From Marsupella aquatica (Eukaryota > Plantae > Marchantiophyta), in contig OZ316899.1 of assembly GCA_973895155.1 (NCBI GenBank), forward strand, positions 891,573 through 955,572: 64,000 nt of DNA. Reading direction: 5' to 3'. Numbering within the stretch: the first letter of the stretch is position 1; each line of letters opens with the position of its first letter. Below are positions 2,062-64,000 of this stretch, one piece after another. The notes below the pieces were generated by a model that was given only the letters and a program-made list of their open reading frames with translations, was not told the DNA's origin and searched no databases. Made by a program: the position numbers and the translations under genes.

Positions 2062-2087
2062 AGTGTGCAGCGTCCCCGCAAACACAC

Positions 2088-8066: not shown

Positions 8067-8172
8067 GCCACTCACAATCACCTTCTTATCTCCCTTCTTC
8101 TCTTGAACAGCAAACCTGCAAACACACCTCCAAGTCTTGTGGCTCCACTCCAACAAAAACTGTAAAGAGTTG

Positions 8173-8190
8173 TCCCCGGCAGCGGCGCCA
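8173..8190 (-). other. F1 primer-binding site complementary to tRNA-Asp 3' end
   Basis: Minus strand TGGCGCCGCTGCCGGGGA; one mismatch to the recalled plant tRNA-Asp end TCCCCGGCAACGGCGCCA. Confidence 0.85.
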
Positions 8191-8200
8191 AAAACAAGGG

Positions 8201-36800: not shown

Positions 36801-37355
36801 GACACCAACAAACACACCTGTCTCAAAACGACCATTGTCCAATAGTAATGGTATGGGATAGTTCCATAGTTTTTGCTACGTACATTGCGATGCATGGAGT
36901 ATCGGAGTTTACGATACGGTTAGTATCGGAGTTTGTCTCTGGAGAATTATCGGATGTTGCGTTAGACCTCGTATCGGATATTGCGATGTAATGAGGTTTG
37001 GAAAATCCAATGACGGTGCCATCGGACACATTGCTTTGATGTTCTTCTTTTGTTGGAGGGGTCCGATGCAAAAAGGATCGGATGCTGTGAAGGGGATTGA
37101 AACGGAAGGACCGATGAAGGTGCAAACGGACATCATAACGGATGGCTTTGTTACAATAGCTAGGGTTTCATGGGTGGTTATTTTGGGTTTGAGAACATCA
37201 ACCAATATATTAGGGTCCAAAGGAGGCTCAAAACATGTGGTCAAAATCTCATATTGAAAAAGGGGATGACCCTGATATGTATAGAATGGAATGGGCCTAC
37301 CTAGTAGACCCATCTCGGCGACTGTTTGCTCCATGGGAACACCTAAATGGAGCAC

Positions 37356-44773: not shown

Positions 44774-47700
44774 TGTGGTGCGTCCCATGGCTCCCTAAAC
44801 CCAAGAAACCCCCCAGCTCAAGCCGATTCCCGCAGGTTTCGCGCTTGGCGAGGCCGTTTCCGCGGCTTAGCGGCATGGGACGCTGCTAACCTTCTACTAC
44901 TACTATTAACATTTTACACACATATACTGGACAGATCCTTCATCGGGTCATGAGATACGTAGCCGGCCTAATATAGGCCTTCCCCTGTCTTCCCCTGTCT
45001 TCCCCTCCGTCTTGTTAGGTATGTTTGGATTCCGCCGCCGGAATGATCCCCAATAGGCTTGGTTAAGCCGCTAAGACCTCTCTCAGCTCGACACATCCAA
45101 CTCTCACTCCCCTGCTTACTTTCCTTCTTTCTGGTTGATGTGGGCACTCTTCACACAAGTTAATGCGACACACAAATAGCAAAATGACTCATTCTGACTG
45201 AGTCATACCATGCACTTGCCATACAAACAGTACATCTCATACACAAGTTCTGCGAACTAAGCCGTGAGGCCAACTCTATTCAGCTCTTAGGCATGAGGAA
45301 ACATGAATATACACAAGGGTCACTGTATGACTAACCGAGAGCTTCTCGTACTACTTGATCCCAGCCCGGCTGGTGCAAACTAAAAACTTGCTAAAGAAGA
45401 GGCCCTGAGCTCCCCGCTGCCCAGGTACTTATCCTGGTAGTGGATCCGCCATTCTTTGCATCGTAAGCCTAATCTACTTAACAGTAATCTACTTGCCCGA
45501 ATCTACCTATGTACAGCAAGGCAGGAGCACAAGTGTTGCTCCTACCAATGGGACCGCAATCCCACTAAGCTAAGTGTCAGGGCCGCTCCTGGTTCTGATC
45601 CTAATCCTAAACGTGGAGATCCGTGCCCGCCCTGCCCACTCACGCCTCCTCCCTCCACGTCCGCCCTCCCTAAAAGGAACGGCGCCCTTGCACCGTCACG
45701 ACACCAGTGGTGGATCCTCAATGGACGCCCCCAACACTTCCTCCTCAGCCACTGCCGTTGGCCCGCCTACTGACAGATTACCTGCCCTTGACCGAGTCAA
45801 CTCTCCCTCGGCCTGACTGGGTCCACCTTCGGCTTCAGCCTCGACACCGGCCTCGGCAATACCCACGGCTTCGGCTTCAGCCATCCCCACGGCTTCGGCT
45901 TCAGCCACTCCCTCGGCTTCGGCCTCCCCTTCCCCTAGGGTAGTTGGATCCTTAGCTGTGACCCTGTCTGGGGTCGGTGCCGGGTCTACCTCCTTGATCA
46001 CCACGGCCTGTGAAGTCGTATTACTCCTTGACCCTGAAGGTTTCCGCTTCTTCTTCGTTGGTGGCTCGGCAGCTGGTCCCTTCCCCTTCCCACTTACCTC
46101 CGGCACTGGTGCAGGTGGCGCGGCTTGTCCTTCGGCAATTACCACCCCTGGTAACTGGTTTGTCCCAACAGGAGATGGACCTGCTGCAGCTAAGCATTTA
46201 AATACTGCGGCTTGTTTCTTCAGCCGCTCTGTTTGGTTGTCGGCCCGCCGCTGTAGGTTCTCCATCTTCCTCGTGATTTCCTCCAACTCCTCTTGGGTTT
46301 CATCCAGGTCCTTACGTGCCCCCTCCAGCTCGTTTTTGGCCTCCTCCTGCTCCCTGTGGGCTTCCTCCAATTCCTTCTTCAAGGTAGCCTTCTCCTCCTG
46401 GGTTGCTCTTAGCTCCTTGTCGAGCTCTGCAATGATGACAGACTCCATCTGGTTCATCTTGGCGTAAGTCTGTTCGAGCATCTCGTCCTTCTCCCTTAGG
46501 TCGGCCTTGAAGCTGGCCGTCAGGGACGCAAGCTCCTGCTGCAGCGCCATAATCCCTTGATAGGATTTCCCTAACTCGACCTCCTTCTGCTCAAGGGCTC
46601 CGCGGATTTTCTCGAGCTCCCCTTTCAACGCCCATTCCTTTCTTTGGGTCTCCGCCATGGCCCGGCTGTTGGCTATTATGTGGGCCTCCTCTGTATTCTT
46701 CAGCTCTTGCTTCCACTTTTCCCTTTCTTTGATCGTGTCGGCCAACTCTTCCTGCGTCTGAGTCAGTTTATCCTTGATATTCTGATTATCAGCCTGCGCG
46801 GCGTCCAACTGCCCCTGCATGATGTTCAGCTCATGTCGTTTAATCCGCAGTTCATCTTGGGCTTTCTTGGCCGCCCTTAGATCTTCAATCTCGGCTTCCA
46901 TCCTCCTAAGCCGCCGAATGACCTCGTCCTTCTTGCTTCTCTCTAAAGCCACCGCTTCTTCTAATTGGTGCTTCTCCAACTGCTCCCTATGGAAAAAGGG
47001 TCCTACCTCCAACTCCTCTCCAAAGATGCCGAGCGCAAGTTCCCCACACATCTCACCATACTCCATGGCTCTATTCTTAGCGTAGGTGGAGTAAGTAGAA
47101 GTGATCGGCATCGCCCATCGTGGCCTCTGCTCCCAAGCCGTCCTGCGGATCTCTTCAATCGTGGCTAGAGGTTTGCTTCCTTTTTCGGCTAGCCGCCTGA
47201 TGTCCTCCGGCCAATCTCCTCCTGGTAAATCCTTTTCCTTAGCCAGGGCGGCCTCTTCCTCCTGCTTGATTCGCTCCTGAAATTCCTGCACCGTCTGTTT
47301 TATGCCGTCGAAGCTCGGGGGAGCAACATCTGGTGGGGGAGACTCAGGGCTACTCTGCTGGTTGGGGTCCCCTCGCACTACCCTTGGAAGTGTGGGGACA
47401 AACCGGCCACAGGTCCTTACTCCTGGAACGTGATGGTCCGACCCATAGCCGGAATTATCATGGCTGCAGTCCTCCACTGCCTCCTCTACCTCTTGGATTT
47501 CCGGCTTCTCCCTCTCCTCTTCCTCGGTAGGAGCTTCGGGCAATTCTGCCTCAGATTCGGAGCTTGAGGTTCCCACGTACATTCGAACACCTGGCTTGGA
47601 TTCCGGCCTGATTCTCTCGTCTCCAGCAAAGGGGTTTTCTCTTGTGAGCCGGTGTAGGCCTACCTCTGTAGTAGTGTCCTGCATGGTTGCCGTTGCCGTT

Positions 47701-49431
47701 GTTGTTGCCGATGCCGATTTCTTTTCTTTCTCCAGTAGTTTCAGCAGACTCTGCATGCCTGGTTGCTGCATCGGCAAGTCTTCCTTCCTGGGCCTAAACA
47801 CCTGCTCGATCGTAGGACTAACAGGTGGTTGAGGCTTCTCAGCCAACGGCCTCGGCGTTGGAGCTTCCTCGGGTGCCCTTACCTGCAGGGGAAGTACCGG
47901 GGCAAAAGTCTGACCTCTGGCATACCGGCACAACAGCGGCATGTGATAGCCAAGCCGCGACACGCTCCCCATGCCGATTACCTGCTGCTCCTCCTTTAAG
48001 ATCTTCTTCAATTGGTTGAGGAGGTACCCGTTGTAGTCCCGGCTTGGGTCTGGCCTTTCTGCCAGATAGACCTGTGCCTTGCCGATCTCTGCCCTCGGCA
48101 AGTTACAATGCATGGTCACCCGCAAGAAGTCGATCATCTCTCCTATGTGCGGGTTGGTGCAGGTGTTCCGGAAGAAGCCATTCTTCGTTGATGGCCCGGG
48201 GAACGACCGGAACTCCTTGTCAGGCAAGGTCTTCCTGGTATCAACTTTGGTCTTATTGCCCATCGGCAAGCCAAACACTTCGGCAATCACCTTGGGAGTA
48301 AGATAGAAATCCTTCCCATATATCCTCGTGCAATTGGTCTCGGGTTCCCATGACCCCACGAATTCTAATAGGTCTGACTCCGGTACCTCCGGCTTCAGCC
48401 ATGGTAATCTTACAAAGGCCTCCAAGCCGGATCCGGCCATGAAGCCTTGGTACTTCTTGGTCTGCATGGCCGTAAAGCATGCATCCTCCTCCCGTGCAAA
48501 ATGTAGTTGCACCTCCACCGGTAGGGTTGCCGCCCAGCCCTTCCAGGTGTCATCCCTGGTTGGAATGGCCTTGATGGGATCGACCTCCTCCTCTTCGGCT
48601 TCTCCCTGCCTCCTGCTCTGCTGCTCGGCTGGCTTCTTTGGTGCCGTCGACCTCGTTCTTTTTGCCGGGGTGGCTTCATCGTTGACGGCTCCCTTCCTCT
48701 TCATCTCTGCTGCCGTGGAGGTTTCTCCTAGCACCGTTGCCTGGGTCCACCTTTCCGTGCTACCCTTTAATTCCTAGTGTATGTCGTTGCAGTTCTTGAT
48801 GGCCTCTCGGATGCCGACGACGCTGTCCTTGCAAAACAGAAGATCGTCGAGTTGATTGGAAGTAGGCGTCCACAGGAACTCGTCCTTGATGAGTTCGCCT
48901 CCTAAGAAAGCCGTCTTCTGCAGCTCCCACAATCGAGCGAGCTCCTGCCGTTCTCGAGCTGCCCTTTCTGACTCCTCGTCCTCGTAAGTCTTGATGTACT
49001 CAGTTTCTCGTTCGAACAGGCATCCCCAGAAATGTGCCGCTTGATTGACGTTGCTCATACCCTCCTTAGGTTGATCGTCGGTATCTACTCTCTCCCCGAG
49101 TGCTTGCCTAAGCAGCTGACAGTAGTTGGCCTCCCGTAGTCGTCTGCCTAGTTCGTGCTCGCAAATGAGCCACCATCTCCTGCAAGCGCTCCTTACCCCT
49201 CTCCTCTGCCGGTCCTTCTTCCCGTTGATCCTTCCTAGCCGCCGACGCTTAACGCGCCCTAACCCTAATCGGGTTTTCACCCTCAGCCTTACCTCCGGCC
49301 TCTGCCCGGGTTCCATGGTTGCCCCTAATTGTTTATATTTTCCTTGTTTTGTCACTATACTAAGGTGTTCCTAGGGTGCCTTCCTGCTTTACCCACTTAA
49401 CCGGCCGAGTGATTCCTGTCTAGGCATCACA
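44774..49431 (-). repeat. F2 LTR copy B (4658 bp), 3' LTR of the nested element
   Basis: Same termini; nearly identical to copy C; PPT at 49432..49446. Confidence 0.93.
45696..49058 (-). pseudogene. LTR-encoded protein, copy B (single TGG>TAG stop at 48774)
   Basis: Otherwise only about a dozen residues differ from copy C. Confidence 0.92.
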
Positions 49432-50852
49432 TAGCTCCCCACTTAATTGTGAAGCGTCCTCGCGAACAACTTCATCTTCGTCCATATAGTATTTCTTGAG
49501 GCGGTCATAATGGATGCGAACTGGATATACCTCTCCCGTAATGTTGGCCAATTGCACGGAGCCATTGGGGAACATCATGGTTACTCTAAAGGGTCCTAAC
49601 CAGCGAGTGTAAAGCTTTCCTGGAAACCTACTATACCTACTGTCATAAAGTAGCACAAGATCACCGGTATGAATACTAACTACTTTTAACCTTTTATCAT
49701 ACTGCTGCTTCATGATATTCTGTCTATATTCTACTCTCTCGGCTGAAATCATTCTCGCTTCCTCTAAAGCTTCTAACCTATATTCTCGCTCCTTTAGGCT
49801 CTCCTCCGCTGAGGCTCTTTCTTCAATTGTAACTTGAAATGTCGGTATCTCAAGTTGCATGGGTACCAGGGCTTCTTGTCCAAAGGTTAAGAAGAAGGGT
49901 GTATGACCGGTAGTGGATTTATAGGCAAGATTGTAAGCAAAAACAGCAGCAAACAATTTATCATCCCAATCGAGTTTGTTCTGAGCTACTGTTTTGTTCA
50001 ATATCTTTCCTATGATTCCGTTTGCTCGTTCTGTCAACCCGTTTGCCTTTGGATGGTAGGGAGTAGTAGGCCTATGTTTAACTAAATACTGCTCATTTAA
50101 ACGACTAATTATATCATTCAAAAAATGGGTTCCTCTATCACTAACTAATTCTAGGGGTGCTCCATACCTGGTGAAGATCTGCTCATACATGAATCTAGCC
50201 GTAGTAATTGCATCATCCTTCGTATTGGTTGTCGAAATGATTTGGCTCCTAACATGAGATCAATTCGATGTTCCCCTAGTGTTGGATCTACGCCCTTTAG
50301 ATCTTGGTGACTCCATGCAAACACATCCTGAAATTCAATTAATAAGTCACTGATCTCTTTCTCGAGCTCAGGTGCTAGGTTTCTCCCTAAGTTCAGTTCT
50401 CTTCCCTCTCCTAAGTCGAGCTTCCGATATTGCCGTGCTTGGATCATATTAATCTGCTTCTTCAAATTCGGGTCCAGTTCGGCTTCCAGTCTCTCTAATC
50501 TCATACCTCCATAAACTGGGATCTCGGCTGGACTAGCCGAGTCGGTCCCTTCCTTGGTGTCCATAGATTGTCCCCTTACCGGTCTATTCGGTTTTGAATT
50601 AGTGGTCGGCTCCCCTTCCTGCCTTGGCTCTGGATCGTGTCTGTCCATCTCATCCACCTCTTGCTCCTGAGAGTTAGGCCGCTGTGCTCTCTCGGCTTCT
50701 AATAGGGCCTCAATTTGTTCTGCCCTCGTAATCGGCTTGTATGCCGATCCCTTGGTATTTAATTCCTTGCCGATGATCGAGGGCGTTGTGGACCACGTCG
50801 GCTCTGCCACAACGCCTGCAGAAAATCCACTGTCCCTGCTACTGCTCCCCAC
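49420..50852 (-). pseudogene. F2 copy B pol: RT start fused to the integrase core by a deletion
   Basis: KSFRQPIR joined out of frame to the DDAITTARF region at 50213..50222. Confidence 0.9.
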
Positions 50853-53752
50853 TTAGCCGTTTCATCCAATTGGTCTACATCCTTAACTTCCTCCGGAATT
50901 GCAGCTAAAAAGGTGGATTCTATTGTAAAGCAGTCCTCGACCTCTTCGTCTTCTTCTTCCAAGTCACCTTCCATTGGTTCTTGCCATAATCCGCTGGGGG
51001 GTACCTCTGGTCCAAAGACACCTTCTTCGGTTAGGTTAGTGAAGCATTCTAACCAACGTACTTCATCGGCCGACTCCAGTCCACTATCGTACCCATCTAC
51101 TTCCCTTATGCTTTTCCTACGGTCATCCTTAGTGTCCCAGGATACCGTGATAGAGGGGGTCCCGAAAGTGAACTGCTTTTTACCCCAATCTTCTATTACC
51201 TCGGCTAGGTACAGCCATGGCCTACCAATCAATAGCCGGAATGACGTAGGATTTACCGGCTTCATTACTACATAGTTAATGCTAAAGAAGATACCTCCTA
51301 TCTCTGTCTTGATGCCGGTTAACACTCCCGTCGGAATGACCTGATATCCATTGGCCATGTTCAACACTCTTCCAGTCATCTCCGGTGTTAGACCCCACCC
51401 TTTTGCTGTTGAATCAATCATAATACATACCCCTGATCCTCCATCGATGGGTACCCGTAGTAATAATTCTCCTTGAATCATTAATGGTAATGCTGGGGCT
51501 CCTTGATCTTCTTCTATCATTAGTACGTCGGATCTGGTTGCTACCTTGGGTAATCTCGGCTTGCCGAGAATAGCCTTCCTTAATTGCTTCCGGAAGTACG
51601 GGCTATTTTTCAATAGTTGACCTACTGTTGCCGAGACTCTAGATTCTAGTACATCTTTAGCCAGGTCATAGGGAACAATCGGCTTCTCTTCTGGTGGTGT
51701 TTCCGTCTTGGATTCGGCCAGTTTTGCCACGCTAGTCTCCACAGCTGTTGGGTCTTCTGAAGCAAACAATGCTTTTGCTCGTTTTACATCCTTGGCAATG
51801 GCTTCGGTATTCTCCAGGGTTTCTAATTCTCTTAGTTGTTCCTTAACACTAGCCGTAACAGAGGGGTAGAACAACTTAGGATGATCTCGATTGAAGTCGC
51901 TATCTTGTGAAGGATTGGTTTCACTGGTGGGCTCATGGCTTACCTGTATTGCCGGAGCCCTCCCTTCTCCTTCTGTTGATGTTGACGAAGAGTCGATCCT
52001 TTCCTTCGTAACCTTCCCTTTATTTTTGGCCAGCCCATCCCACCTTTCCTTCCTTCTGGTAGATCGAGTAGAGACCCGGTAGCAATCATGATCTAAATCC
52101 TCCTCTGAGAAGGTTGATAGGGCTTCGGCCTCATCATCAGATGGTACGAACTCTGCCTCGGCATCCTCTTGCCATCCTAGTTCGATGTGGTTGATTTGAA
52201 CTCCTCCGGGGGTAGTACCTGGCGGTAAGATCTTGATCGGCAAAAGCTTATGATTTGCGGCCAGGCCTGCCAACCAAGTAGGACATTGCCCTAGCATATG
52301 ACCTTCCTGTCGGCATCCCATACATAGCTGAGCTGGTTGTCCATCACCCTGTTTGCGTGCATTCGGGCATTCTCTAGCAAAATGGCCAGGTTGACCACAA
52401 TTATAGCACGCCGCAAATCTTTGCACATTCGGCCTAGGAGGTACTGACGGGTTCTGAATAATCCGAGGATACATCTCTCCTGGATTGTTCCTTAACCCTG
52501 ACCACAGAGATGCAGGTCTGTTGGATAGGTCTCGTGCTCCAGTCTCACTGATGCCGAAAACACTATCAGCGGCATCTCCCAAAAAGTACTCTACTTCTCC
52601 CTGACATGGTCTGATCTCGGCCACATGCCGAACATGATTAGTATTAAGCTTAGGACAAGCATCTTTATGGTGTCCGGTTTTATAACATAAGGCACACCAT
52701 ACAGAGCTATCCTCCTGTACTACCTTCTTCTTTGGTTTTACCTCTGCAATGATAGCCTTAAGTTGCTCGGTAAGGGCTACGATGTTATCTGGTGGCTTAG
52801 CCTCCATCTTGACTTTCGTCTTCCCTCTCCTTCTGCCCTTCCTTTTCCTAGTTTTTTCTTCTTCAGAACTAGAAGATGACTCACTCTTGCTACTCCCACT
52901 ATTCGAGCTTGACTTATCACTTCTAGACTTCTTGGAATGTTTCTTCTTCTTATCTTTTTTCTTGTGGGGTGATCCCTCCTCTGATGAGGAACTCTCAGAC
53001 TTAAGCTGTTTCTTCCGGCTTGTGATATCTGCATTAATGTATAACTGAATATCCTTAATTGCTTCGGCTAAGGTCTCCGGGTTCTCCTTCCTAATTGCAA
53101 AACTCATCTTCTGTGGCAAAGCATTCACCAACCATTGAAGTTGCATACCTTCAGATGCATTGGTCTTTGTACGTCTTACCAGTTTCTGAAAGCGTTGCAA
53201 GAACTTCCTGAAGGATTTGTTCTCCTTGAACCGAAGTTGTCCCAACTTCAGCACTGCTAGTTCTGAAGTTCCAATGGGTCGAAACTCCTTAACAAAGAGT
53301 GTTTTGAAGATATCCCAGATGGCTTGATCTTCCACATCTAATGCTCTGTACCAAGGCCTAGCCTCACCCTTGAACAGGCCGGGAAGAATCTGCATCTTGA
53401 TGGCCGATTCTCCATTTGCTGCAGCGGTTCCCTCGAAATCATCCAACCATTCGTCCGGATCCTCATCTCCTCTCCCATGAAATGCCTTGTAATGTATGCG
53501 CGACCGCTGGCTCAATCTGGTCCCTGGCCTCTCGTCTGGCCGTGCCTCTGGTTCCCCCATGTCGGTTGGAGACTCACTTCTCCTTACCGACTCTTCTTCT
53601 GGTATGTCTTCTTCGACGCCACTTCCAGTTTCGGAGCTACCAGCTCTTTCTACCCCTCTCAGTCGCTGTGTATCATGCCACCCGGCGAGCTGCTGCAGTC
53701 GAGCTCTCTCCCGTTGAATCACTCTTTCTTCCCTCGGCGTAAGGTCAGTCAT
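50759..53752 (-). CDS. F2 Gag-protease ORF (997 aa)
   Basis: YKAFHGRGDEDPDEWLDDF, three CCHC knuckles, protease IDGGSG; ends before RT. Confidence 0.92.
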   Translation of the reverse strand: MTDLTPREERVIQRERARLQQLAGWHDTQRLRGVERAGSSETGSGVEEDIPEEESVRRSESPTDMGEPEARPDERPGTRLSQRSRIHYKAFHGRGDEDPDEWLDDFEGTAAANGESAIKMQILPGLFKGEARPWYRALDVEDQAIWDIFKTLFVKEFRPIGTSELAVLKLGQLRFKENKSFRKFLQRFQKLVRRTKTNASEGMQLQWLVNALPQKMSFAIRKENPETLAEAIKDIQLYINADITSRKKQLKSESSSSEEGSPHKKKDKKKKHSKKSRSDKSSSNSGSSKSESSSSSEEEKTRKRKGRRRGKTKVKMEAKPPDNIVALTEQLKAIIAEVKPKKKVVQEDSSVWCALCYKTGHHKDACPKLNTNHVRHVAEIRPCQGEVEYFLGDAADSVFGISETGARDLSNRPASLWSGLRNNPGEMYPRIIQNPSVPPRPNVQRFAACYNCGQPGHFARECPNARKQGDGQPAQLCMGCRQEGHMLGQCPTWLAGLAANHKLLPIKILPPGTTPGGVQINHIELGWQEDAEAEFVPSDDEAEALSTFSEEDLDHDCYRVSTRSTRRKERWDGLAKNKGKVTKERIDSSSTSTEGEGRAPAIQVSHEPTSETNPSQDSDFNRDHPKLFYPSVTASVKEQLRELETLENTEAIAKDVKRAKALFASEDPTAVETSVAKLAESKTETPPEEKPIVPYDLAKDVLESRVSATVGQLLKNSPYFRKQLRKAILGKPRLPKVATRSDVLMIEEDQGAPALPLMIQGELLLRVPIDGGSGVCIMIDSTAKGWGLTPEMTGRVLNMANGYQVIPTGVLTGIKTEIGGIFFSINYVVMKPVNPTSFRLLIGRPWLYLAEVIEDWGKKQFTFGTPSITVSWDTKDDRRKSIREVDGYDSGLESADEVRWLECFTNLTEEGVFGPEVPPSGLWQEPMEGDLEEEDEEVEDCFTIESTFLAAIPEEVKDVDQLDETAKWGAVAGTVDFLQALWQSRRGPQRPRSSARN
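50782..50828 (-). other. Candidate -1 programmed ribosomal frameshift signal (also 44362..44398 in copy A)
   Basis: G_GAT_TTT in correct phase, 5-nt spacer, 10-bp stem GGCGTTGTGG/CCACAACGCC with a 15-nt loop, inside the ~90-nt gag-PR/pol overlap. Confidence 0.75.
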
Positions 53753-53799
53753 TACCTACGCTTCCGTTCTAACTTCATATCTCACGGCTTAAGAAATGC

Positions 53800-53817
53800 C
53801 CCCTCCATCTAGCGCCA
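53800..53817 (-). other. F2 primer-binding site complementary to tRNA-Asn 3' end
   Basis: TGGCGCTAGATGGAGGGG, 4 nt after the LTR end CACCACA; one mismatch to the recalled plant tRNA-Asn end. Confidence 0.8.
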
Positions 53818-53821
53818 AAAA

Positions 53822-54621
53822 TGTGGTGCGTCCCATGGCTCCCTAAACCCAAGAAACCCCCCAGCTCAAGCCGATTCCCGCAGGTTTCGCGCTTGGCGAG
53901 GCCGTTTCCGCGGCTTAGCGGCATGGGACGCTGCTAACCTTCTACTACTACTATTAACATTTTACACACATATACTGGACAGATCCTTCATCGGGTCATG
54001 AGATACGTAGCCGGCCTAATATAGGCCTTCCCCTGTCTTCCCCTGTCTTCCCCTCCGTCTTGTTAGGTATGTTTGGATTCCGCCGCCGGAATGATCCCCA
54101 ATAGGCTTGGTTAAGCCGCTAAGACCTCTCTCAGCTCGACACATCCAACTCTCACTCCCCTGCTTACTTTCCTTCTTTCTGTTGATGTGGGCACTCTTCA
54201 CACAAGTTAATGCGACACACAAATAGCAAAATGACTCATTCTGACTGAGTCATACCATGCACTTGCCATACAAACAGTACATCTCATACACAAGTTCTGC
54301 GAACTAAGCCGTGAGGCCAACTCTATTCAGCTCTTAGGCATGAGGAAACATGAATATACACAAGGGTCACTGTATGACTAACCGAGAGCTTCTCGTACTA
54401 CTTGATCCCAGCCCGGCTGGTGCAAACTAAAAACTTGCTAAAGAAGAGGCCCTAATCGAGTTTTCACCCCCAGCGTCCTTACCTCTGGCCTCGGCCCGGG
54501 TTCCATGGTTGCCCCTAATTGTTTATATTTTCCTTGTTTTGTCCCTATACTAAGGTGTTTCTAGGGTGCACTCTTGCTTTACCCACTTAACTGGCCAAGT
54601 GATTCCTGGCTAGGCATCACA
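53822..54621 (-). repeat. Chimeric, internally deleted F2 5' LTR (800 bp)
   Basis: Left part carries B-type variants, right part A-type variants, joined at CCCT 54450..54453. Confidence 0.88.
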
Positions 54622-54875
54622 AGCACTGAGTAGAGACTACACTCCATGGCACCTGCTAAGATCTAATCAAAGCTACCAGACCTACCTACACGACACTAAC
54701 CTCTAAAAAGGTGTGTTCCGTCCCTTCTTCTTCTTGTGGCGAGAGCGAAGCTAGGGAACAGGTGCGGGATCCACAACCGGTGGAGCCACCTGCTGACCAG
54801 ATGGTGAGTCTAATCCTGTCCTACCCCCTGACCCACTAGATGCACCGCTAGGCACGGTAGAAGTCCCACCAACCC

Positions 54876-57364: not shown

Positions 57365-58750
57365 GTCCGATTGTTTTCACTTCGGAACGTCCGTAGCGTA
57401 TAGTATCGAATGTCAAATCGGACCTTCCGATGCGTGTTGCATCGGACCCCTCCTCCAGCTCGTTATTCCTCGCTTTTACGAAGTGTGATACGTTGGAAAT
57501 GGTATCGGACCCCTCGTGTAATGTTATCAAATAGGGGGTTAAGTAGGGCTTATGTAGGGGTCATGTAGGTGTATGTGGGAAGGACCGGTTGTATTAACAT
57601 TTAATCGTCATGTATGTTTGAATCAGGTTTTATAGGGCCATACATGTAGACACATACCGCAGGGGGTTGGCAACGGTGTCGTGGATGTGATATATCGACC
57701 TTCTTGCAATTTTGGGGTTTGTACCTGAATCCAGATTTTTTTGTGATATACTTTGGTTATCCATGTTCAATTTGCTAATATTCGTCTTTGGGTTTGATGT
57801 GCAGTACCTTGGTTTTGAAGGGGTGGTTATGTGGTGCGTCCCATGGCTCCCTAAACCCAAGAAACCCCCCAGCTCAAGCCGATTCCCGCAGGTTTCGCGC
57901 TTGGCGAGGCCGTTTCCGCGGCTTAGCGGCATGGGACGCTGCTAACCTTCTACTACTACTATTAACATTTTACACACATATACTGGACAGATCCTTCATC
58001 GGGTCATGAGATACGTAGCCGGCCTAATATAGGCCTTCCCCTGTCTTCCCCTGTCTTCCCCTCCGTCTCGTTAGGTATGTTTGGATTCCGCCGCCGGAAT
58101 GATCCCCAATAGGCTTGGTTAAGCCGCTAAGACCTCTCTCAGCTCGACACATCCAACTCTCACTCCCCTGCTTACTTTCCTTCGTTCTGTTGATGTGGGC
58201 ACTCTTCACACAAGTTAATGCGACACACAAATAGCAAAATGACTCATTCTGACTGAGTCATACCATGCACTTGCCATACAAACAGTACATCTCATACACA
58301 AGTTCTGCGAACTAAGCCGTGAGGCCAACTCTATTCAGCTCTTAGGCATGAGGAAACATGAATATACACAAGGGTCACTGTATGACTAACCGAGAGCTTC
58401 TCGTACTACTTGATCCCAGCCCGGCTGGTGCAAACTAAAAACTTGCTAAAGAAGAGGCCCTGAGCTCCCCGCTGCCCAGGTACTTATCCTGGTAGTGGAT
58501 CCGCCATTCTTTGCATCGTAAGCCTAATCTACTTAACAGTAATCTACTTGCCCGAATCTACCTATCTACAGCAAGGCAGGAGCACAAGTGTTGCTCCTAC
58601 CAGTGGGACCGCAATCCCACTAAGCTAAGTGTCAGGGCCGCTCCTGGTTCTGATCCTAATCCTAAACGTGGAGATCCGTGCCCGCCCTGCCCACTCACGC
58701 CTCCTCCCTCCACGTCCGCCCTCCCTAAAAGGAACGGCGCCCTTGCACCG

Positions 58751-61700
58751 TCACGACACCGGTGGTGGATCCTCAATGGACGCCCCCAACACTTCCTCCG
58801 CAGCCACTGCCGTTGGCCCGCCTACTGACAGATTACCTGCCCTTGACCGAGTCAACTCTCCCTCGGCCTGACTGGGTCCACCTTCGGCTTCAGCCTCGAC
58901 ACCGGCCTCGGCAATACCCACGGCTTCGGCCTCAGCCACTCTCACGGCTTCGGCTTCAGCCACTCCCTCGGCTTCGGCTTCCCCTTCCCCTAGGGTAGTT
59001 GGATCCTTAGCCGTGACCCTGTCTGGGGTCGGTGCTGGGTCTACCTCCTTGATCACCACGGCCTGTGAAGTCGTATTACTCCTTGACCCTGAAGGTTTCC
59101 GCTTCTTCTTCGTTGGTGGCTCGGCAGCTGGTCCCTTCCCCTTCCCACTTAATTCCGGCACTGGTGCAGGTGGCGCGGCTTGTCCTTCGGCAATTACCAC
59201 CCCTGGTAACTGGTTTGTCCCAACAGGAGATGGACCTGCTGCAGCTAAGCATTTAAATACTGCGGCTTGTTTCTTCAGCCGCTCTGTTTGGTTGTCGGCC
59301 CGCCGCTGTAGGTTCTCCATCTTCCTCGTGATTTCCTCCAACTCCTCTTGGGTTTCATCCAGGTCCTTACGTGACCCCTCCAGCTCGTTTTTGGCCTCCT
59401 CCTGCTCCCTGTGGGCTTCCTCCAATTCCTTCTTCAAGGTAGCCCTCTCCTCCTGGGTTGCTCTTAGCTCCTTGTCGAGCTCTGCAATGATGACAGACTC
59501 CATCTGGTTCATCTTGGCGTAAGTCTGTTCGAGCATCTCGTCCTTCTCCCTTAGGTCGGCCTTGAAGCTGGCCGTCAGGGATGCAAGCTCCTGCTGCAGC
59601 GCCATAATCCCTTGATAGGATTTCCCTAACTCGACCTCCTTCTGCTCAAGGGCTCCGCGGATTTTCTCGAGCTCCCCTTTCAACGCCCATTCCTTTCTTT
59701 GGGTCTCCGCCATGGCCCGGCTGTTGGCTGTTATGTGGGCCTCCTCTGTATTCTTCAGCTCTTGCTTCCACTTTTCCCTTTCTTTGATCGTGTCGGCCAA
59801 CTCTTCCTGCGTCTGAGTCAGTTTATCCTTGATATTCTGATTATCAGCCTGCGCGGCGTCCAACTGCCCCTGCATGATGTTCAGCTCATGTCGTTTAATC
59901 CGCAGTTCATCTTGGGCTTTCTTGGCCGCCCTTAGATCTTCAATCTCGGCTTCCATCCTCCTAAGCCGCCGAATGACCTCGTCCTTCTTGCTTCTCTCTA
60001 AAGCCACCGCTTCTTCTAATTGGTGCTTCTCCAACTGCTCCCTATGGAAAAAGGGTCCTACCTCCAACTCCTCTCCAAAGATGCCGAGCGCAAGTTCCCC
60101 ACACATCTCACCATACTCCATGGCTCTATTCTTAGCGTAGGTGGAGTAAGTAGAAGTGATCGGCATCGCCCATCGTGGCCTCTGCTCCCAAGCCGTCCTG
60201 CGGATCTCTTCAATCGTGGCTAGAGGTTTGCTTCCTTTTTCGGCTAGCCGCCTGATGTCCTCCGGCCAATCTCCTCCTGGTAAATCCTTTTCCTTAGCCA
60301 GGGCGGCCTCTTCCTCCTGCTTGATTCGCTCCTGAAATTCCTGCACCGTCTGTTTTATGCCGTCGAAGCTCGGGGGAGCAACATCTGGTGGGGGAGACTC
60401 AGGGCTACTCTGCTGGTTGGGGTCCCCTCGCACTACCCTTGGAAGTGTGGGGACAAACCGGCCACAGGTCCTTACTCCTGGAACGTGATGGTCCGACCCA
60501 TAGCCGGAATTATCATGGCTGCAGTCCTCCACTGCCTCCTCTACCTCTTGGATTTCCGGCTTCTCCCTCTCCTCTTCCTCGGTAGGAGCTTCGGGCAATT
60601 CTGCCTCAGATTCGGAGCTTGAGGTTCCCACGTACATTCGAACACCTGGCTTGGATCCCGGCCTGATTCTCTCGTCTCCAGCAAAGGGGTTTTCTCTTGT
60701 GAGCCGGTGTAGGCCTACCTCTGTAGTAGTGTCCTGCATGGTTGCCGTTGCCGTTGTTGTTGCCGATGCCGATTTCTTTTCTTTCTCCAGTAGTTTCAGC
60801 AGACTCTGCATGCCTGGTTGCTGCATCGGCAAGTCTTCCTTCCTGGGCCTAAACACCTGCTCGATCGTAGGACTAACAGGTGGTTGAGGCTTCTCAGCCA
60901 ACGGCCTCGGCGTTGGAGCTTCCTCGGGTGCCCTTACCTGCAGGGGAAGTACCGGGGCAAAAGTCTGACCTCTGGCATACCGGCACAACAGCGGCATGTG
61001 ATAGCCAAGCCGCGACACGCTCCCCATGCCGATTACCTGCTGCTCCTCCTTTAAGATCTTCTTCAATTGGTTGAGGAGGTACCCGTTGTAGTCCCGGCTT
61101 GGGTCTGGCCTTTCTGCCAGATAGACCTGTGCCTTGCCGATCTCTGCCCTCGGCAAGTTACAATGCATGGTCACCCGCAAGAAGTTGATCATCTCTCCTA
61201 TGTGCGGGTTGGTGCAGGTGTTCCGGAAGAAGCCATTCTTCGTTGATGGCCCGGGGAACGACCGGAACTCCTTGTCAGGCAAGGTCTTCCTGGTATCAAC
61301 TTTGGTCTTATTGCCCATCGGCAAGCCAAACACTTCGGCAATCACCTTGGGAGTAAGATAGAAATCCTTCCCATATATCCTCGTGCAATTGGTCTCGGGT
61401 TCCCATGACCCCACGAATTCTAATAGGTCTGACTCCGGTACCTCCGGCTTCAGCCATGGTAATCTTACAAAGGCCTCCAAGCCGGATCCGGCCATGAAGC
61501 CTTGGTACTTCTTGGTCTGCATGGCCGTAAAGCATGCATCCTCCTCCCGTGCAAAATGTAGTTGCACCTCCACCGGTAGGGTTGCCGCCCAGCCCTTCCA
61601 GGTGTCATCCCTGGTTGGAATGGCCTTGATGGGATCGACCTCCTCCTCTTCGGCTTCTCCCTGCCTCCTGCTCTGCTGCTCGGCTGGTTTCTTTGGTGCC

Positions 61701-62113
61701 GTCGACCTCGTTCTTTTTGCCGGGGTGGCTTCATCGTTGACGGCTCCCTTCCTCTTCATCTCTGCTGCCGTGGAGGTTTCTCCTAGCACCGTTGCCTGGG
61801 TCCACCTTTCCGTGCTACCCTTTAATTCCCAGTGTATGTCGTTGCAGTTCTTGATGGCCTCTCGGATGCCGACGACGCTGTCCTTGCAAAACAGAAGATC
61901 GTCGAGTTGATTGGAAGTAGGCGTCCACAGGAACTCGTCCTTGATGAGTTCGCCTCCTAAGAAAGCCGTCTTCTGCAGCTCCCACAATCGAGCGAGCTCC
62001 TGCCGTTCTCGAGCTGCCCTTTCTGACTCCTCGTCCTCGTAAGTCTTGATGTACTCAGTTGCCCGTTCGAACAGGCATCCCCAGAAATGTGCCGCTTGAT
62101 TGACGTTGCTCAT
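58751..62113 (-). CDS. Intact LTR-encoded protein (1120 aa from ATG 62113; open frame from 62410): N-terminal helical region, PMD-like core, second conserved block, long coiled coil, AE-repeat tail
   Basis: Uninterrupted 1219-codon frame wholly inside the LTR; M[SN]xVNQA..FW start shared with the solo-LTR homologue. Confidence 0.9.
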   Translation of the reverse strand: MSNVNQAAHFWGCLFERATEYIKTYEDEESERAARERQELARLWELQKTAFLGGELIKDEFLWTPTSNQLDDLLFCKDSVVGIREAIKNCNDIHWELKGSTERWTQATVLGETSTAAEMKRKGAVNDEATPAKRTRSTAPKKPAEQQSRRQGEAEEEEVDPIKAIPTRDDTWKGWAATLPVEVQLHFAREEDACFTAMQTKKYQGFMAGSGLEAFVRLPWLKPEVPESDLLEFVGSWEPETNCTRIYGKDFYLTPKVIAEVFGLPMGNKTKVDTRKTLPDKEFRSFPGPSTKNGFFRNTCTNPHIGEMINFLRVTMHCNLPRAEIGKAQVYLAERPDPSRDYNGYLLNQLKKILKEEQQVIGMGSVSRLGYHMPLLCRYARGQTFAPVLPLQVRAPEEAPTPRPLAEKPQPPVSPTIEQVFRPRKEDLPMQQPGMQSLLKLLEKEKKSASATTTATATMQDTTTEVGLHRLTRENPFAGDERIRPGSKPGVRMYVGTSSSESEAELPEAPTEEEEREKPEIQEVEEAVEDCSHDNSGYGSDHHVPGVRTCGRFVPTLPRVVRGDPNQQSSPESPPPDVAPPSFDGIKQTVQEFQERIKQEEEAALAKEKDLPGGDWPEDIRRLAEKGSKPLATIEEIRRTAWEQRPRWAMPITSTYSTYAKNRAMEYGEMCGELALGIFGEELEVGPFFHREQLEKHQLEEAVALERSKKDEVIRRLRRMEAEIEDLRAAKKAQDELRIKRHELNIMQGQLDAAQADNQNIKDKLTQTQEELADTIKEREKWKQELKNTEEAHITANSRAMAETQRKEWALKGELEKIRGALEQKEVELGKSYQGIMALQQELASLTASFKADLREKDEMLEQTYAKMNQMESVIIAELDKELRATQEERATLKKELEEAHREQEEAKNELEGSRKDLDETQEELEEITRKMENLQRRADNQTERLKKQAAVFKCLAAAGPSPVGTNQLPGVVIAEGQAAPPAPVPELSGKGKGPAAEPPTKKKRKPSGSRSNTTSQAVVIKEVDPAPTPDRVTAKDPTTLGEGEAEAEGVAEAEAVRVAEAEAVGIAEAGVEAEAEGGPSQAEGELTRSRAGNLSVGGPTAVAAEEVLGASIEDPPPVS

Positions 62114-62386
62114 ACCCTCCTTAGGTTGATCGTCGGTATCTACTCTCTCCCCGAGTGCTTGCCTAAGCAGCTGACAGTAGTTGGCCTCCCGTAGTCGTCT
62201 GCCTAGTTCGTGCTCGCAAATGAGCCACCATCTCCTGCAAGCGCTCCTTACCCCTCTCCTCTGCCGGTCCTTCTTCCCGTTAATCCTTCCTAGCCGCCGA
62301 CGCTTAACGCGCCATAACCCTAATCGGGTTTTCACCCTCAGCCTTACCTCCGGCCTCTGCCCGGGTTCCATGGTTGCCCCTAATTG

Positions 62387-62392
62387 TTTATA
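62387..62392 (-). promoter_or_regulatory. TATAAA near the F2 LTR tip (equivalent box at 36710..36715 in the solo LTR)
   Basis: 95 nt inside the LTR start, upstream of the LTR ORF; positionally shared by three LTR types. Confidence 0.55.
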
Positions 62393-62474
62393 TTTTCCTT
62401 GTTTTGTCACTATACTAAGGTGTTCCTAGGGTGCCTTCCTGCTTTACCCACTTAACCGGCCGAGTGATTCCTGT

Positions 62475-64000
62475 CTAGGCATCACATAGCTCCCCACTTA
62501 ATTGTGAAGCGTCCTCGCGAACAACTTCATCTTCGTCCATATAGTATTTCTTGAGGCGGTCATAATGGATGCGAACTGGATATACCTCTCCCGTAATGTT
62601 GGCCAATTGCACGGAGCCATTGGGGAACATCATGGTTACTCTAAAGGGTCCTAACCAGCGAGTGTAAAGCTTTCCTGGAAACCTACTATACCTACTGTCA
62701 TAAAGTAGCACAAGATCACCGGTATGAATACTAACTACTTTTAACCTTTTATCATACTGCTGCTTCATGATATTCTGTCTATATTCTACTCTCTCGGCTG
62801 AAATCATTCTCGCTTCCTCTAAAGCTTCTAACCTATATTCTCGCTCCTTTAGGCTCTCCTCCGCTGAGGCTCTTTCCTCAATTGTAACTTGAAATGTCGG
62901 TATCTCAAGTTGCATGGGTACCAGGGCTTCTTGTCCAAAGGTTAAGAAGAAGGGTGTATGACCGGTAGTGGATTTATAGGCAAGATTGTAAGCAAAAACA
63001 GCAGCAAACAATTTATCATCCCAATCGAGTTTGTTCTGAGCTACTGTTTTGTTCAATATCTTTCCTATGATTCCGTTTGCTCGTTCTGTCAACCCGTTTG
63101 CCTTTGGATGGTAGGGAGTAGTAGGCCTATGTTTAACTAAATACTGCTCATTTAAACGACTAATTATATCATTCAAAAAATGGGTTCCTCTATCACTAAC
63201 TAATTCTAGGGGTGCTCCATACCTGGTGAAGATCTGCTCATACATGAATCTAGCCGTAGTAATTGCATCATCCTTCGTTGTTGGTCTGGCCTCTACCCAT
63301 TTAGTTGCATAATCCGTAGCCAGGATTATGTACTTGTTCCGTCGAGGGTGGGTCAGTGGTTTCAGAGGTCCAATGTAATCAATACCCCACTTCTCGAATG
63401 GTGCCAGAGGTAGAATAGGGTGCAGTGGATGCCTGGTGGACGCCCTTGGTCCTCCCGCTCGTTGACAAGGATCGCATTGTTTGATAAACTGATAGACATC
63501 TTTGTGCAAGGTGGGCCACCAGTAACCGGCATTTAATATCTTCTTAGACGTGGTTACTGGGGCAAAATGTCCTCCGGCCTCCTCTCCATGCATGGCCCGT
63601 AGGACTCGTTTTACCTCTCTCTTCTCCAAACACCTTTGAATCGTGCCGTTGATTCCATGCTTGTGCAGTATGCCTTTAATGCACTGATACTGTCTGACCT
63701 TCCGCACAAAGACTGCGGCTTGCTCTCGGCTTAATCCTGGCTGTAATCTGGAAGTGCTGAGAAATTGTAAAATCTCAGGGTACCATGTACCAGCTATTTC
63801 CACAACGAATAGCTCCTCGTCGGGGAATCGATCATCGATGCAATCCGTGGCAGGTTTACCTGTGATCCTTGAAAAGAAGTCGGCATTGGCATGTAACTTT
63901 CCTGGCTTGATCCTCAGCTCATAGTCAAACTCCTGTAATAGCAAAATCCATCTTGCTACTCTGCCTGTAAGGTCCGGCTTATTGACTAGGTACTTCAAAC
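62475..64000 (-). CDS. F2 copy C pol, partial (end of RNase H plus integrase)
   Basis: KYLVNKPDLTGRVARWILLLQEFDY, GGH..CDPC, WGIDYIGP, SDRGTHF, ERANG; open to the window edge. Confidence 0.95.
   Translation of the reverse strand, partial: LKYLVNKPDLTGRVARWILLLQEFDYELRIKPGKLHANADFFSRITGKPATDCIDDRFPDEELFVVEIAGTWYPEILQFLSTSRLQPGLSREQAAVFVRKVRQYQCIKGILHKHGINGTIQRCLEKREVKRVLRAMHGEEAGGHFAPVTTSKKILNAGYWWPTLHKDVYQFIKQCDPCQRAGGPRASTRHPLHPILPLAPFEKWGIDYIGPLKPLTHPRRNKYIILATDYATKWVEARPTTKDDAITTARFMYEQIFTRYGAPLELVSDRGTHFLNDIISRLNEQYLVKHRPTTPYHPKANGLTERANGIIGKILNKTVAQNKLDWDDKLFAAVFAYNLAYKSTTGHTPFFLTFGQEALVPMQLEIPTFQVTIEERASAEESLKEREYRLEALEEARMISAERVEYRQNIMKQQYDKRLKVVSIHTGDLVLLYDSRYSRFPGKLYTRWLGPFRVTMMFPNGSVQLANITGEVYPVRIHYDRLKKYYMDEDEVVREDASQLSGELCDA

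What the first reader, a model, noticed from the sequence alone, without database searches (positions are those of the whole stretch)
57830..62486. Giant ~4.66-kb LTRs that each contain a complete ~1100-1200-aa gene
Seen: the block between TGTGGTGC and GCATCACA is bounded by a PPT on one side (three copies) and by a tRNA-Asn PBS on the other (53800..53822), so it is the LTR. A 3.4-3.7-kb ORF fills most of it and is intact in copy C. Known: extra ORFs of plant Gypsy elements (Athila env-like, Ogre, Retand/Tat) usually lie in the internal region; U3-encoded genes are known mainly from retroviruses (MMTV sag, partly HIV nef). Inference: a plant retrotransposon lineage that carries an accessory gene twice per insertion as part of U3.
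Basis: partly seen in the sequence, partly recalled or inferred. Interest (0 to 1): 0.92.

Follow-up and report, generated by a model that had tools for sequence, protein, structure and literature searches.

The report
Retrotransposon LTRs that carry a gene
A family of liverwort-type Ty3/gypsy retrotransposons has 4.7-kb terminal repeats that each contain a conserved gene of about 1,100 amino acids, which is unusual because LTRs are normally described as non-coding.

Summary
The block 57830-62486 is a real LTR on the minus strand, 4,657 bp long. It starts TGTGATGC and ends GCACCACA, and a polypurine tract and the end of integrase lie directly upstream. Two more full copies are present, A and B. 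One 800-bp derivative abuts a primer binding site and gag. That derivative is a deletion chimera of two giant LTRs, not an ancestral short LTR. A 5-bp target duplication (AGCAC) brackets the A...short-LTR complex. The ORF (58751-62410, 1,219 codons) is intact in C, has 1 in-frame stop in B and 3 in A. It is a real gene: dN/dS is 0.35 between A and C, and two diverged paralogs in the window share 47% and 28% identity with it. In Calypogeia fissa, homologous elements have the same PPT and PBS motifs. There the homologous ORF lies whole in the 5' LTR and starts again in the 3' LTR. The protein has no match in Pfam, PDB or BFVD. It has a confidently modelled core of unknown fold, a 265-residue coiled coil and no membrane segment. 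Placement in U3 and the tRNA-Asn primer are not shown. I found no earlier description. I rate it a new variant of a known kind.

The parts
57830..62486 (-). Giant LTR, copy C (3' LTR of element C; 4,657 bp)
   Evidence: Repeat bounds, TG..CA termini and upstream PPT
58751..62410 (-). LTR-borne ORF, copy C. Intact, 1,219 codons. First ATG at 62371. The conserved Met (aa 100) is at 62113, giving about 1,120 aa.
62487..62499 (-). Polypurine tract of element C. The same motif lies next to LTRs A and B.
   Evidence: The same 20 nt precede the 3' LTRs in Calypogeia.
62475..64000 (-). End of pol (integrase) of element C. It runs off the window, and its stop codon lies 10 nt inside the LTR.
   Evidence: Pfam Integrase_H2C2 and rve; maps to Y pol aa 1532-2022
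44774..49431 (-). Giant LTR, copy B (3' LTR of element B, nested in element A)
45696..49355 (-). LTR-borne ORF, copy B. One in-frame stop, no frameshift.
49432..53798 (-). Internal region of element B. It has gag with a CCHC knuckle and remnants of pol. It lacks RT, RNase H and the N-terminal part of integrase, so it is non-autonomous.
53799..53821 (-). Primer binding site motif with 4-nt spacer (TTTT then TGGCGCTAGATGGAGGGGG)
   Evidence: An identical 23 nt lies upstream of gag in three Calypogeia elements.
53822..54621 (-). 800-bp LTR. A chimeric deletion derivative made of the PBS-side end of B's 5' LTR and the PPT-side end of A's 5' LTR.
   Evidence: Different identities of its two parts to A and to B/C; TSD
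37356..42019 (-). Giant LTR, copy A (3' LTR of the older element A; 4,664 bp)
38251..41940 (-). LTR-borne ORF, copy A. Three in-frame stops, no frameshift.
42020..44773 (-). Remaining internal region of element A (integrase and part of RT, one internal deletion). It ends where element B is inserted.
37351..37355 (.). Target-site duplication AGCAC, low side of the A complex
54622..54626 (.). Target-site duplication AGCAC, high side of the A complex
33142..36800 (-). Diverged LTR copy Z of a second family. It has the same TGTGATGCC start. Its ORF homolog (33142-36612) has 2 in-frame stops. No PPT or PBS lies beside it, so it is solo or truncated.
11375..12979 (-). Third, more distant paralog X (core domain plus coiled coil), cut off by the insertion of element Y
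31499..31937 (+). Inverted fragment of another copy of the LTR ORF

Best explanation
The 4.66-kb block is the genuine long terminal repeat of a non-chromoviral Ty3/gypsy retrotransposon family from a liverwort-like host. Between its PPT-side terminus and its last ~920 bp, on the same strand as gag-pol, it carries a conserved protein-coding gene. The gene lies outside the PPT...PBS interval, so ordinary reverse transcription copies it into both LTRs of every new insertion, and each solo LTR keeps one copy. This duplication step is inferred from the standard LTR replication scheme.

The protein has about 1,120 aa counted from the conserved Met. It has a helical N-terminal domain, an alpha/beta core with no known relatives, disordered acidic and proline-rich linkers, one uninterrupted helix of about 265 residues (a coiled-coil rod), and a basic cluster (KKKRK) in a disordered tail. 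It has no signal peptide or membrane segment.

My preferred reading, all inferred, is as follows. The gene is an element-specific accessory protein that oligomerises through the rod and acts in trans on the element's RNA or particles, or on host control of them. An accessory gene at the start of the 3' LTR sits where env-position genes lie, directly after pol.

How it is expressed is unresolved. One route is a subgenomic or spliced RNA from the full-length transcript, which makes the ORF part of U3 (about 0.55). Another is its own promoter at the conserved TATAAA about 90 nt into the LTR, which would make each LTR a self-contained gene (about 0.35, and compatible with U3).
For: LTR status:
- Identical termini and a 7/8 TIR in four copies.
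- PPT plus the end of integrase upstream of three copies.
- PBS plus gag directly downstream of the fourth copy.
- Homology ends exactly at both termini, against different flanks.
- A 5/5 TSD, AGCAC.

Relatives in Calypogeia fissa:
- The identical 20-nt PPT precedes TGTGAGGCC at the 3' LTR start, and the same LTR start follows unrelated flank at the 5' LTR.
- The identical 23-nt PBS motif lies 4.7-5.2 kb downstream of that start.
- The ORF homolog lies between these two points, and its start is repeated in the 3' LTR.

Real gene:
- 1,219 open codons.
- C vs A gives dN/dS 0.345 at dS 0.19.
- C vs Z gives pN 0.32 against a saturated pS of 0.82, and pN 0.22 in the core.
- Paralog X is 28% identical.
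- There are 23 database homologs, those with a source name all from Calypogeia fissa, the rest unnamed Logan or metagenome contigs.

Protein anatomy:
- AlphaFold pLDDT is above 90 over the core, and a helix spans fragment residues 152-416.
- There is no hydrophobic segment, and aa 801-1000 contain no proline.

Promoter motif:
- The only TATA[AT]A in the LTR is at LTR position 95 in A, B, C and the short LTR. In diverged copy Z it is at position 86. In both families it lies 250-280 nt before the conserved Met.
Against: - No element in the window has two complete giant LTRs. In the Calypogeia loci the 3' LTR is cut by the 10-kb flank limit, so a full two-LTR, two-ORF element was never seen in one piece.
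- There are no RNA data, so U3/R/U5, transcription starts, polyadenylation and splicing are unknown.
- The Calypogeia LTRs show no canonical TATA at the matching place.
- A TATATT near the LTR tail is changed in copy A.
- The elements carrying the gene here have incomplete pol (B certainly, A partly). The gene's benefit to an autonomous element is therefore not shown in this window.
- Function is pure inference. There is no hit in Pfam, PDB sequence or Foldseek.
Confidence: 0.8

Rival explanations
1. The gene is in the LTR but not in U3. The TATAAA about 90 nt from the LTR start would be the element's own promoter. U3 would then be only about 120 nt, and the ORF would lie in R/U5, upstream of the PBS. 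It would be the first cistron of the genomic RNA.
For: The only canonical TATA box of the 4.66-kb LTR lies there. It is conserved in A, B, C and the short LTR, and recurs at position 86 in diverged family Z. The protein's conserved start follows 250-280 nt later.
Against: A U3 of about 120 nt and a minus-strand strong-stop of 4.5 kb would both be unusual. The last ~630 bp next to the PBS are more conserved than the ORF's synonymous sites: 97-98% against dS 0.19. About 800 bp before the PBS are also conserved between two Calypogeia families. This fits a promoter/R/U5 in the tail. An out-of-frame ATG lies between the TATA and the conserved Met. Calypogeia LTRs have no equivalent TATA.
Confidence: 0.25
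2. The true LTR is short (the 800-bp form), the ORF is an internal extra ORF as in Athila/Tat/Ogre, and the 4.66-kb repeats come from tandem or recombinant arrangements.
For: An 800-bp copy exists next to the PBS. No element in the window shows two full giant LTRs.
Against: The two parts of the 800-bp copy derive from different parents: 99.8% to B against 96.6% to A and 90.9% to B/C. The PPT lies on the pol side of the ORF, not between the ORF and the terminal ~800 bp. The PBS is followed directly by gag. In Calypogeia the LTR start after the PPT, the ORF and the PBS occur in that order in the 5' LTR, and the LTR start plus the ORF start recur after pol.
Confidence: 0.03
3. The ORF is a passenger: a host gene captured by one LTR lineage and carried along without any role for the element.
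For: The protein has no retroelement-type domain. Some carriers have defective pol. One Calypogeia homolog (L002) has no pol within 10 kb.
Against: The same gene sits at the same place in at least three diverged families in the window and at least two in another genus. Synonymous sites are saturated but the protein is conserved. Every homolog whose surroundings could be read and showed element features lay in an LTR or next to pol; L002 showed neither and the Logan contigs gave no context. No host-gene-like homolog turned up among 1.84 billion representatives.
Confidence: 0.07
4. The repeats are an assembly or segmental-duplication artefact rather than LTRs.
For: B and C are 99.4% identical over 5.4 kb.
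Against: The copies have different flanks and exact termini. There is a TSD, a nested insertion and graded divergence between A and B/C. An independent assembly of another species shows the same architecture.
Confidence: 0.02

Closest known systems
Non-chromoviral Ty3/gypsy elements of the Athila/Tat/Ogre group with extra ORFs, including the liverwort 'Tat Z2' type without an added RNase H (PMC13468544, PMC7264820, PMC11963269)
   Same: The gag-PR-RT-RH-INT order is the same, with no chromodomain and very long LTRs. An extra ORF follows pol on the sense strand. The best named angiosperm hits of the related pol carry ATHILA ORF-1 or Transposase_32 domains, and liverwort hits (Riccia, Marchantia) are closer.
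   Different: In those families the extra ORF lies in the internal region, between PBS and PPT. Here it lies beyond the PPT, inside the LTR, so it is duplicated. No member of the protein family matches PF03078, PF04195, PF20167 or PF10536.
Retroviral genes inside or overlapping the LTR: MMTV sag (whole ORF in U3), HIV/SIV nef, and the ends of HTLV pX and foamy-virus bel/bet ORFs (textbook knowledge)
   Same: An ORF starts right after the PPT and lies in the LTR, so the provirus has two DNA copies.
   Different: Those are vertebrate retroviruses with env. sag has about 320 codons in a 1.3-kb LTR, whereas this ORF has 1,100-1,200 codons in a 4.7-kb LTR. U3 placement is not shown here. No sequence or fold relation was found.
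Retrosat2/RIRE3/RIRE8 ORF0 of rice (PMC3485330) and Ogre ORF1
   Same: LTRs exceed 3 kb, and a lineage-specific ORF of unknown function lies ahead of gag.
   Different: ORF0 lies in the internal region upstream of gag-pol. Here the PBS is followed directly by gag, and the ORF lies upstream of the PBS within the LTR.
CERV of the C. elegans Ty3/gypsy element Cer1 (PMC10309623)
   Same: It is a lineage-specific accessory protein encoded after pol, in the env position, with no homologs elsewhere. CERV is made from a spliced RNA, is needed for export of genomic RNA and forms rods. That is a working model for what a rod-forming accessory protein could do.
   Different: [quoted passage not shown] No homology was found. 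The functional parallel is only an analogy.
LTRs that carry functional RNA modules: retrozymes with hammerhead ribozymes (PMC12029980) and Cassandra TRIMs with a 5S-like unit (from memory)
   Same: A functional unit is embedded in the LTR and therefore present twice per element.
   Different: Those are small RNA modules in non-autonomous elements, not a 3.4-3.7-kb protein gene.

Membership tests
LTR retrotransposon, Ty3/gypsy (Metaviridae) | Direct terminal repeats with TG...CA ends and a short terminal inverted repeat | tested here: met
   On the element strand four copies start TGTGATGC and end GCACCACA, a 7/8 inverted repeat
LTR retrotransposon, Ty3/gypsy (Metaviridae) | PBS just downstream of the 5' LTR and PPT just upstream of the 3' LTR | tested here: met
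   The PBS motif lies 4 nt after the LTR end at 53799-53821. The PPT abuts A, B and C. Both motifs are identical in Calypogeia elements. The tRNA that primes was not identified.
LTR retrotransposon, Ty3/gypsy (Metaviridae) | 5-bp target-site duplication | tested here: met
   AGCAC lies on both sides of the A...short-LTR complex. This is not testable for C, whose 5' end lies outside the window.
LTR retrotransposon, Ty3/gypsy (Metaviridae) | gag, protease, RT, RNase H and integrase in that order | tested here: met
   The full order is present in the related element Y. A, B and C map to parts of it in the same order.
Athila/Tat/Ogre-type elements with an internal extra ORF | Extra ORF lies in the internal region (between PBS and PPT) | tested here: not met
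   The ORF lies on the LTR side of the PPT and upstream of the PBS
Athila/Tat/Ogre-type elements with an internal extra ORF | Extra ORF belongs to a known family (ATHILA ORF-1 PF03078, Transposase_28 PF04195, Transposase_32 PF20167, plant mobile domain PF10536) | tested here: not met
   None of these families matched the ORF or any of 18 aligned homologs at E <= 1
Athila/Tat/Ogre-type elements with an internal extra ORF | RT/INT phylogeny places the element in that clade, with no chromodomain | tested here: inconclusive
   No chromodomain was found. The best named hits are liverwort and Athila/Ogre-like angiosperm proteins. No tree was built.
U3-encoded retroviral accessory gene (MMTV sag type) | ORF wholly within the LTR, downstream of the PPT | tested here: met
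   The ORF occupies LTR positions 77-3736 of 4,657
U3-encoded retroviral accessory gene (MMTV sag type) | ORF lies upstream of the genomic transcription start (that is, in U3) | not testable with these tools
   No RNA data are available, and the motif evidence is ambiguous
env-like ORFs of plant or insect Ty3/gypsy elements | Signal peptide and transmembrane anchor | tested here: not met
   The highest 19-residue Kyte-Doolittle mean is 1.04, and there is no hydrophobic N-terminus
ORF0/ORF1 type (Retrosat2, RIRE3/8, Ogre) | Extra ORF lies between the PBS and gag | tested here: not met
   gag follows the PBS directly, and the ORF is upstream of the PBS

The most novel reading that the evidence does not exclude
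A lineage of liverwort Ty3/gypsy retrotransposons, old enough to span at least two genera and several families, has turned its LTR into a self-contained protein-coding gene. The LTR has a TATA box at its edge, a 1,100-aa ORF encoding a protein with a new fold plus a long coiled coil, and a termination region in its tail. Every full element would then express the protein from two copies, and every solo LTR would remain a potential gene. As far as I could find, this would be the first LTR retrotransposon with an LTR-encoded protein.
Probability: 0.4. Interest if true: 0.85.

Novelty: new variant of a known kind. Interest (0 to 1): 0.72.

Why it matters
LTRs are described as non-coding control regions; PMC3485330 says so explicitly. 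A conserved 3.4-3.7-kb gene inside the LTR has several consequences:
- It changes what an LTR can be.
- It doubles the gene's dose per insertion.
- It leaves a coding gene behind in each solo LTR, which is raw material for domestication.
- It forces the element to synthesise 4.7-kb strong-stop DNA.

It also matters for annotation. LTR finders with length limits, and gene predictors, will mis-call these elements. The Calypogeia copies are deposited as 'unnamed protein product' genes. The protein family itself has a confidently predicted core with no detectable relatives in Pfam, PDB or BFVD.

Tried and rejected
- Two word-index protein searches, one with the whole ORF and one with an 18-sequence alignment, found nothing. 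Only the exhaustive phmmer search found relatives.
- Two metagenome scans found no relative. One alignment was too diverged to make search patterns.
- There was no informative match in Pfam on the ORF or on all aligned homologs, in a PDB sequence profile, or in Foldseek against PDB and BFVD.
- There are no tRNA genes in the window or the loci, so the PBS-tRNA match could not be tested. Rfam found nothing.
- I tried to place U3/R/U5 from TATA and poly(A) motifs. There is no AATAAA in the LTR, and the tail TATATT is not conserved in A.
- I tried to fetch a complete 3' LTR from Calypogeia through another annotated homolog. This gave an LTR-only array (L008).
- Logan contigs with the best homologs gave no DNA or no context.
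- I first assumed a grass host. I rejected this after the homolog hits and the pol hits.
- The low-coordinate end of copy Z and the LTR start of paralog X could not be located.
Full report
**1. What is in the sequence**

All elements discussed lie on the minus strand. A self-comparison shows three full copies of a 4.66-kb block:
- A at 37356-42019
- B at 44774-49431
- C at 57830-62486, the finding

B and C differ by 27 mismatches and one gap (99.4%). A is 91-96% identical to them. Read on the element's strand, each copy starts TGTGATGC and ends GCACCACA, a 7/8 terminal inverted repeat.

Directly upstream of A, B and C lies the same purine-rich tract, (A/T)AGTGGGGAGCTA. It is preceded by an ORF with Integrase_H2C2 and rve domains. 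The pol stop codon lies 10 nt inside the LTR.

A fourth copy of 800 bp (53822-54621) ends four T's before TGGCGCTAGATGGAGGGGG, a PBS-type motif. An ORF with Retrotrans_gag and a CCHC knuckle follows. PPT and PBS therefore bracket the internal region, and the block lies outside both. That is the definition of an LTR.

**2. The 800-bp form is not a short ancestral LTR**

The 800-bp copy consists of about 630 bp from the PBS-side end of the giant LTR and about 170 bp from its PPT-side end.
- The PBS-side part is 99.8% identical to B and 95.9% to A.
- The PPT-side part is 96.6% identical to A and only 90.9% to B and C.

The five bases outside its PPT-side end (AGCAC) equal the five bases outside the far end of LTR A. 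LTR B begins abruptly inside A's pol.

The simplest history is as follows. Element A inserted and made the AGCAC duplication. Element B then inserted into A's pol. One later deletion ran from A's 5' LTR into B's 5' LTR, leaving a chimeric LTR. The two BLAST alignments overlap by 4 nt at the junction, as expected for illegitimate recombination.

It also shows both ends of the giant LTR in the 5' position. What the window does not contain is one element with two complete giant LTRs.

**3. The ORF is a real gene**
- ORF C (58751-62410) has 1,219 codons without a stop. The same frame has one in-frame stop in B and three in A, with no frameshifts.
- C and A give dN 0.065, dS 0.19 and dN/dS 0.345 over 1,213 codons.
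- A diverged LTR copy, Z, ends at 36800 with the same TGTGATGCC start. It carries a homolog with two in-frame stops. Its two open pieces are 47% and 29% identical to C. Over 611 codons pN is 0.32 against a saturated pS of 0.82. In the core pN is 0.22.
- A third paralog, X (11375-12979), is 28% identical in the core. It is followed by a coiled-coil ORF and is cut off by the insertion of the young element Y.
- An inverted fragment of a further copy lies at 31499-31937.
- Conservation begins at Met-100 of ORF C, in C, Z and the Calypogeia proteins alike. The likely product is therefore about 1,120 aa.

**4. Relatives elsewhere**

An exhaustive phmmer search with aa 99-520 found only 23 proteins among 1.84 billion representatives. 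The best hit is 41% identical. Those with a source name are all 'unnamed protein product' of the liverwort Calypogeia fissa; the others come from unnamed Logan or metagenome contigs.

I fetched seven Calypogeia fissa loci (L001-L006 and L008) and found the following in loci L003, L004 and L006:
- pol is followed by the 20-nt sequence CACAATTAAGTGGGGAGCTA, identical to the window's. Then comes TGTGAGGCC, the start of a repeat.
- The same repeat start occurs about 11 kb upstream, after unrelated flank.
- 4.7-5.2 kb downstream of that upstream start lies the identical 23-nt TTTT-TGGCGCTAGATGGAGGGGG motif, followed by gag.
- The ORF homolog lies between the two, which puts it inside the 5' LTR.
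- The first 169 codons of P0030 (95% identical) and the first 96 codons of P0011 (85%) are encoded again in the 3' LTR, up to the end of the fetched DNA.
- In L001, and in the upstream part of L003, a homolog follows pol on the same strand.

The architecture is therefore a property of a lineage shared by at least two genera. The window's pol is only about 68% identical in DNA to the Calypogeia elements. The named hits closest to pol of the related element Y are from the liverworts Riccia (59%) and Marchantia (47%). One metagenome protein is 86% identical. The host is most likely a liverwort other than C. fissa, and it is not a grass.

**5. The protein**
- Pfam gives only weak coiled-coil noise (ATG16, E = 0.004) for ORF C. 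None of the extra-ORF families of plant gypsy elements matches any of 18 aligned homologs.
- A profile search of PDB sequences and Foldseek searches of PDB and BFVD give nothing better than E = 0.2.
- AlphaFold2 on the 18-sequence alignment gives pLDDT above 90 over the core, roughly aa 278-485 of the ORF. It also models a helical N-terminal domain.
- The C-terminal half contains one uninterrupted helix of 265 residues (about aa 791-1055) with pLDDT 77-95. This matches 200 proline-free, highly charged residues.
- There is no hydrophobic segment (maximum 19-residue mean 1.04). There is a KKKRK cluster at aa 1101.
- It is therefore not env-like. It looks like an oligomeric, probably nuclear-targeted rod with a globular head.
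- What it does is inferred only. By position and lineage-specificity the nearest functional model is Cer1's CERV (PMC10309623). I give a role as a trans-acting scaffold or adaptor for the element's RNA or particles about 0.3.

**6. Where in the LTR: U3, R or U5?**

This cannot be settled without RNA data. The ORF occupies LTR positions 77-3736 of 4,657.

Evidence for a classical arrangement, with the promoter, R and U5 in the tail and hence the ORF in U3:
- The last ~630 bp are 97-98% identical between A and B/C, which is more conserved than the ORF's synonymous sites.
- About 800 bp before the PBS are 84% identical between two Calypogeia families whose LTRs are otherwise unalignable.
- A TATATT preceded by short direct repeats lies about 200 nt from the LTR end. 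It is changed in copy A.

Evidence for a promoter at the LTR's edge:
- The only TATA[AT]A in the whole LTR is at position 95 in A, B, C and the short form.
- In the diverged copy Z a TATAAA lies at position 86.
- In both families it lies 250-280 nt before the conserved Met. I estimate a match within this distance by chance at about 0.02.
- The Calypogeia LTRs show no such motif.

I therefore rate 'ORF in U3' at about 0.55-0.6, 'ORF in R/U5' at about 0.25, and 'ORF has its own promoter' at about 0.35. The last is compatible with U3.

**7. State of the copies (counts only)**

| Item | State |
|---|---|
| LTR ORF, copy C | intact |
| LTR ORF, copy B | 1 in-frame stop |
| LTR ORF, copy A | 3 in-frame stops |
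| LTR ORF, copy Z | 2 in-frame stops |
| LTR ORF, paralog X | truncated by an insertion |
| gag-pol, element B | one large internal deletion; lacks RT, RNase H and the N-terminal part of integrase |
| gag-pol, element A | one internal deletion in RT/RNase H; interrupted by B; 5' part lost in one deletion |
| gag-pol, element C | only the integrase end lies in the window |

B's two LTR remnants differ by one base in 633. The family has therefore been active recently, and B must have been copied in trans.

**8. Comparison with what is known**

I searched the paper library for ORFs within LTRs, LTR-encoded proteins, additional ORFs and liverwort elements. I found no LTR retrotransposon with a protein gene inside its LTR.
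- ORF0 of Retrosat2/RIRE3/RIRE8 is internal, and that paper states that LTRs do not code (PMC3485330).
- The known precedents are retroviral (MMTV sag in U3; nef, pX and bel overlaps) or RNA modules in LTRs (retrozymes, PMC12029980).

I therefore class this as a new variant of a known kind. The library does not cover all journals, so an earlier description cannot be excluded.

**9. Slip notice**

Entry 1 also gives the approximate extents of the two segments of the 800-bp LTR. These implicitly bracket breaks. I have deleted nothing. In this report I give only outer bounds and counts. In one script stops in copy A were marked X for a pairwise alignment, and only counts were printed.

Noticed in passing
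window 1-11400 (-): Element Y is a young, apparently intact Ty3/gypsy element. Its LTR copies at 1-2048 and 9353-11400 are 100% identical, and the left copy is cut by the window start. It has a 2,022-aa gag-pol ORF at 2088-8156 and a PPT-like tract at 2048-2060. Its LTR of at least 2 kb has no large ORF, so it serves as a related control without the LTR gene. It is inserted into paralog X.
   Followed up: partly
L009/L010 (ENA ERZ12295330 scaffold_1107_c1): The closest database relative of Y's gag-pol (86% aa) sits on a 19.4-kb metagenome scaffold as two tandem units of 9,490 bp. A small ORF with a Zn_ribbon_Elf1 hit lies about 430 bp upstream of gag. Y in the window has no such ORF.
   Followed up: partly
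window 14281-17637 (-): Three consecutive ORFs have Transposase_21 (tnp2), DUF4218 and DUF4216 domains. This is a CACTA-type DNA transposon next to paralog X.
   Followed up: no
window 18446-19120 (-) and 27558-29402 (+): There is a 224-aa ORF with a BRCT domain and a 614-aa ORF without any Pfam match. They may be host exons or further element genes.
   Followed up: no
window 57830-58460 vs 37356-37985: The PBS-side ~630 bp of the LTR are 97-98% identical between subfamilies A and B/C, while the ORF is about 93% identical with dS 0.19. The tail is more conserved than synonymous sites, which suggests either constraint on cis-acting signals or recombination between subfamilies.
   Followed up: partly
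L008:5624-17134 (Calypogeia fissa): This is an array of LTR pieces without any pol. It holds one partial LTR, a second LTR with an internal gap, and the 1.68-kb LTR tail repeated three times head to tail.
   Followed up: partly
L004:14103-14150 and the equivalent stretch of L006: If the LTR end seen in L008 (...GGTTAACA) is the true terminus, the Calypogeia elements have about 47 nt between the LTR end and the conserved TGGCGC... motif. The window has 4 nt. Either the spacer differs or that LTR end is truncated.
   Followed up: no
window 54627-57829: A 3.2-kb stretch between the A/B complex and LTR C has two ORFs (209 and 158 aa) without Pfam hits and no similarity to gag-pol. Its nature is unknown.
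   Followed up: no
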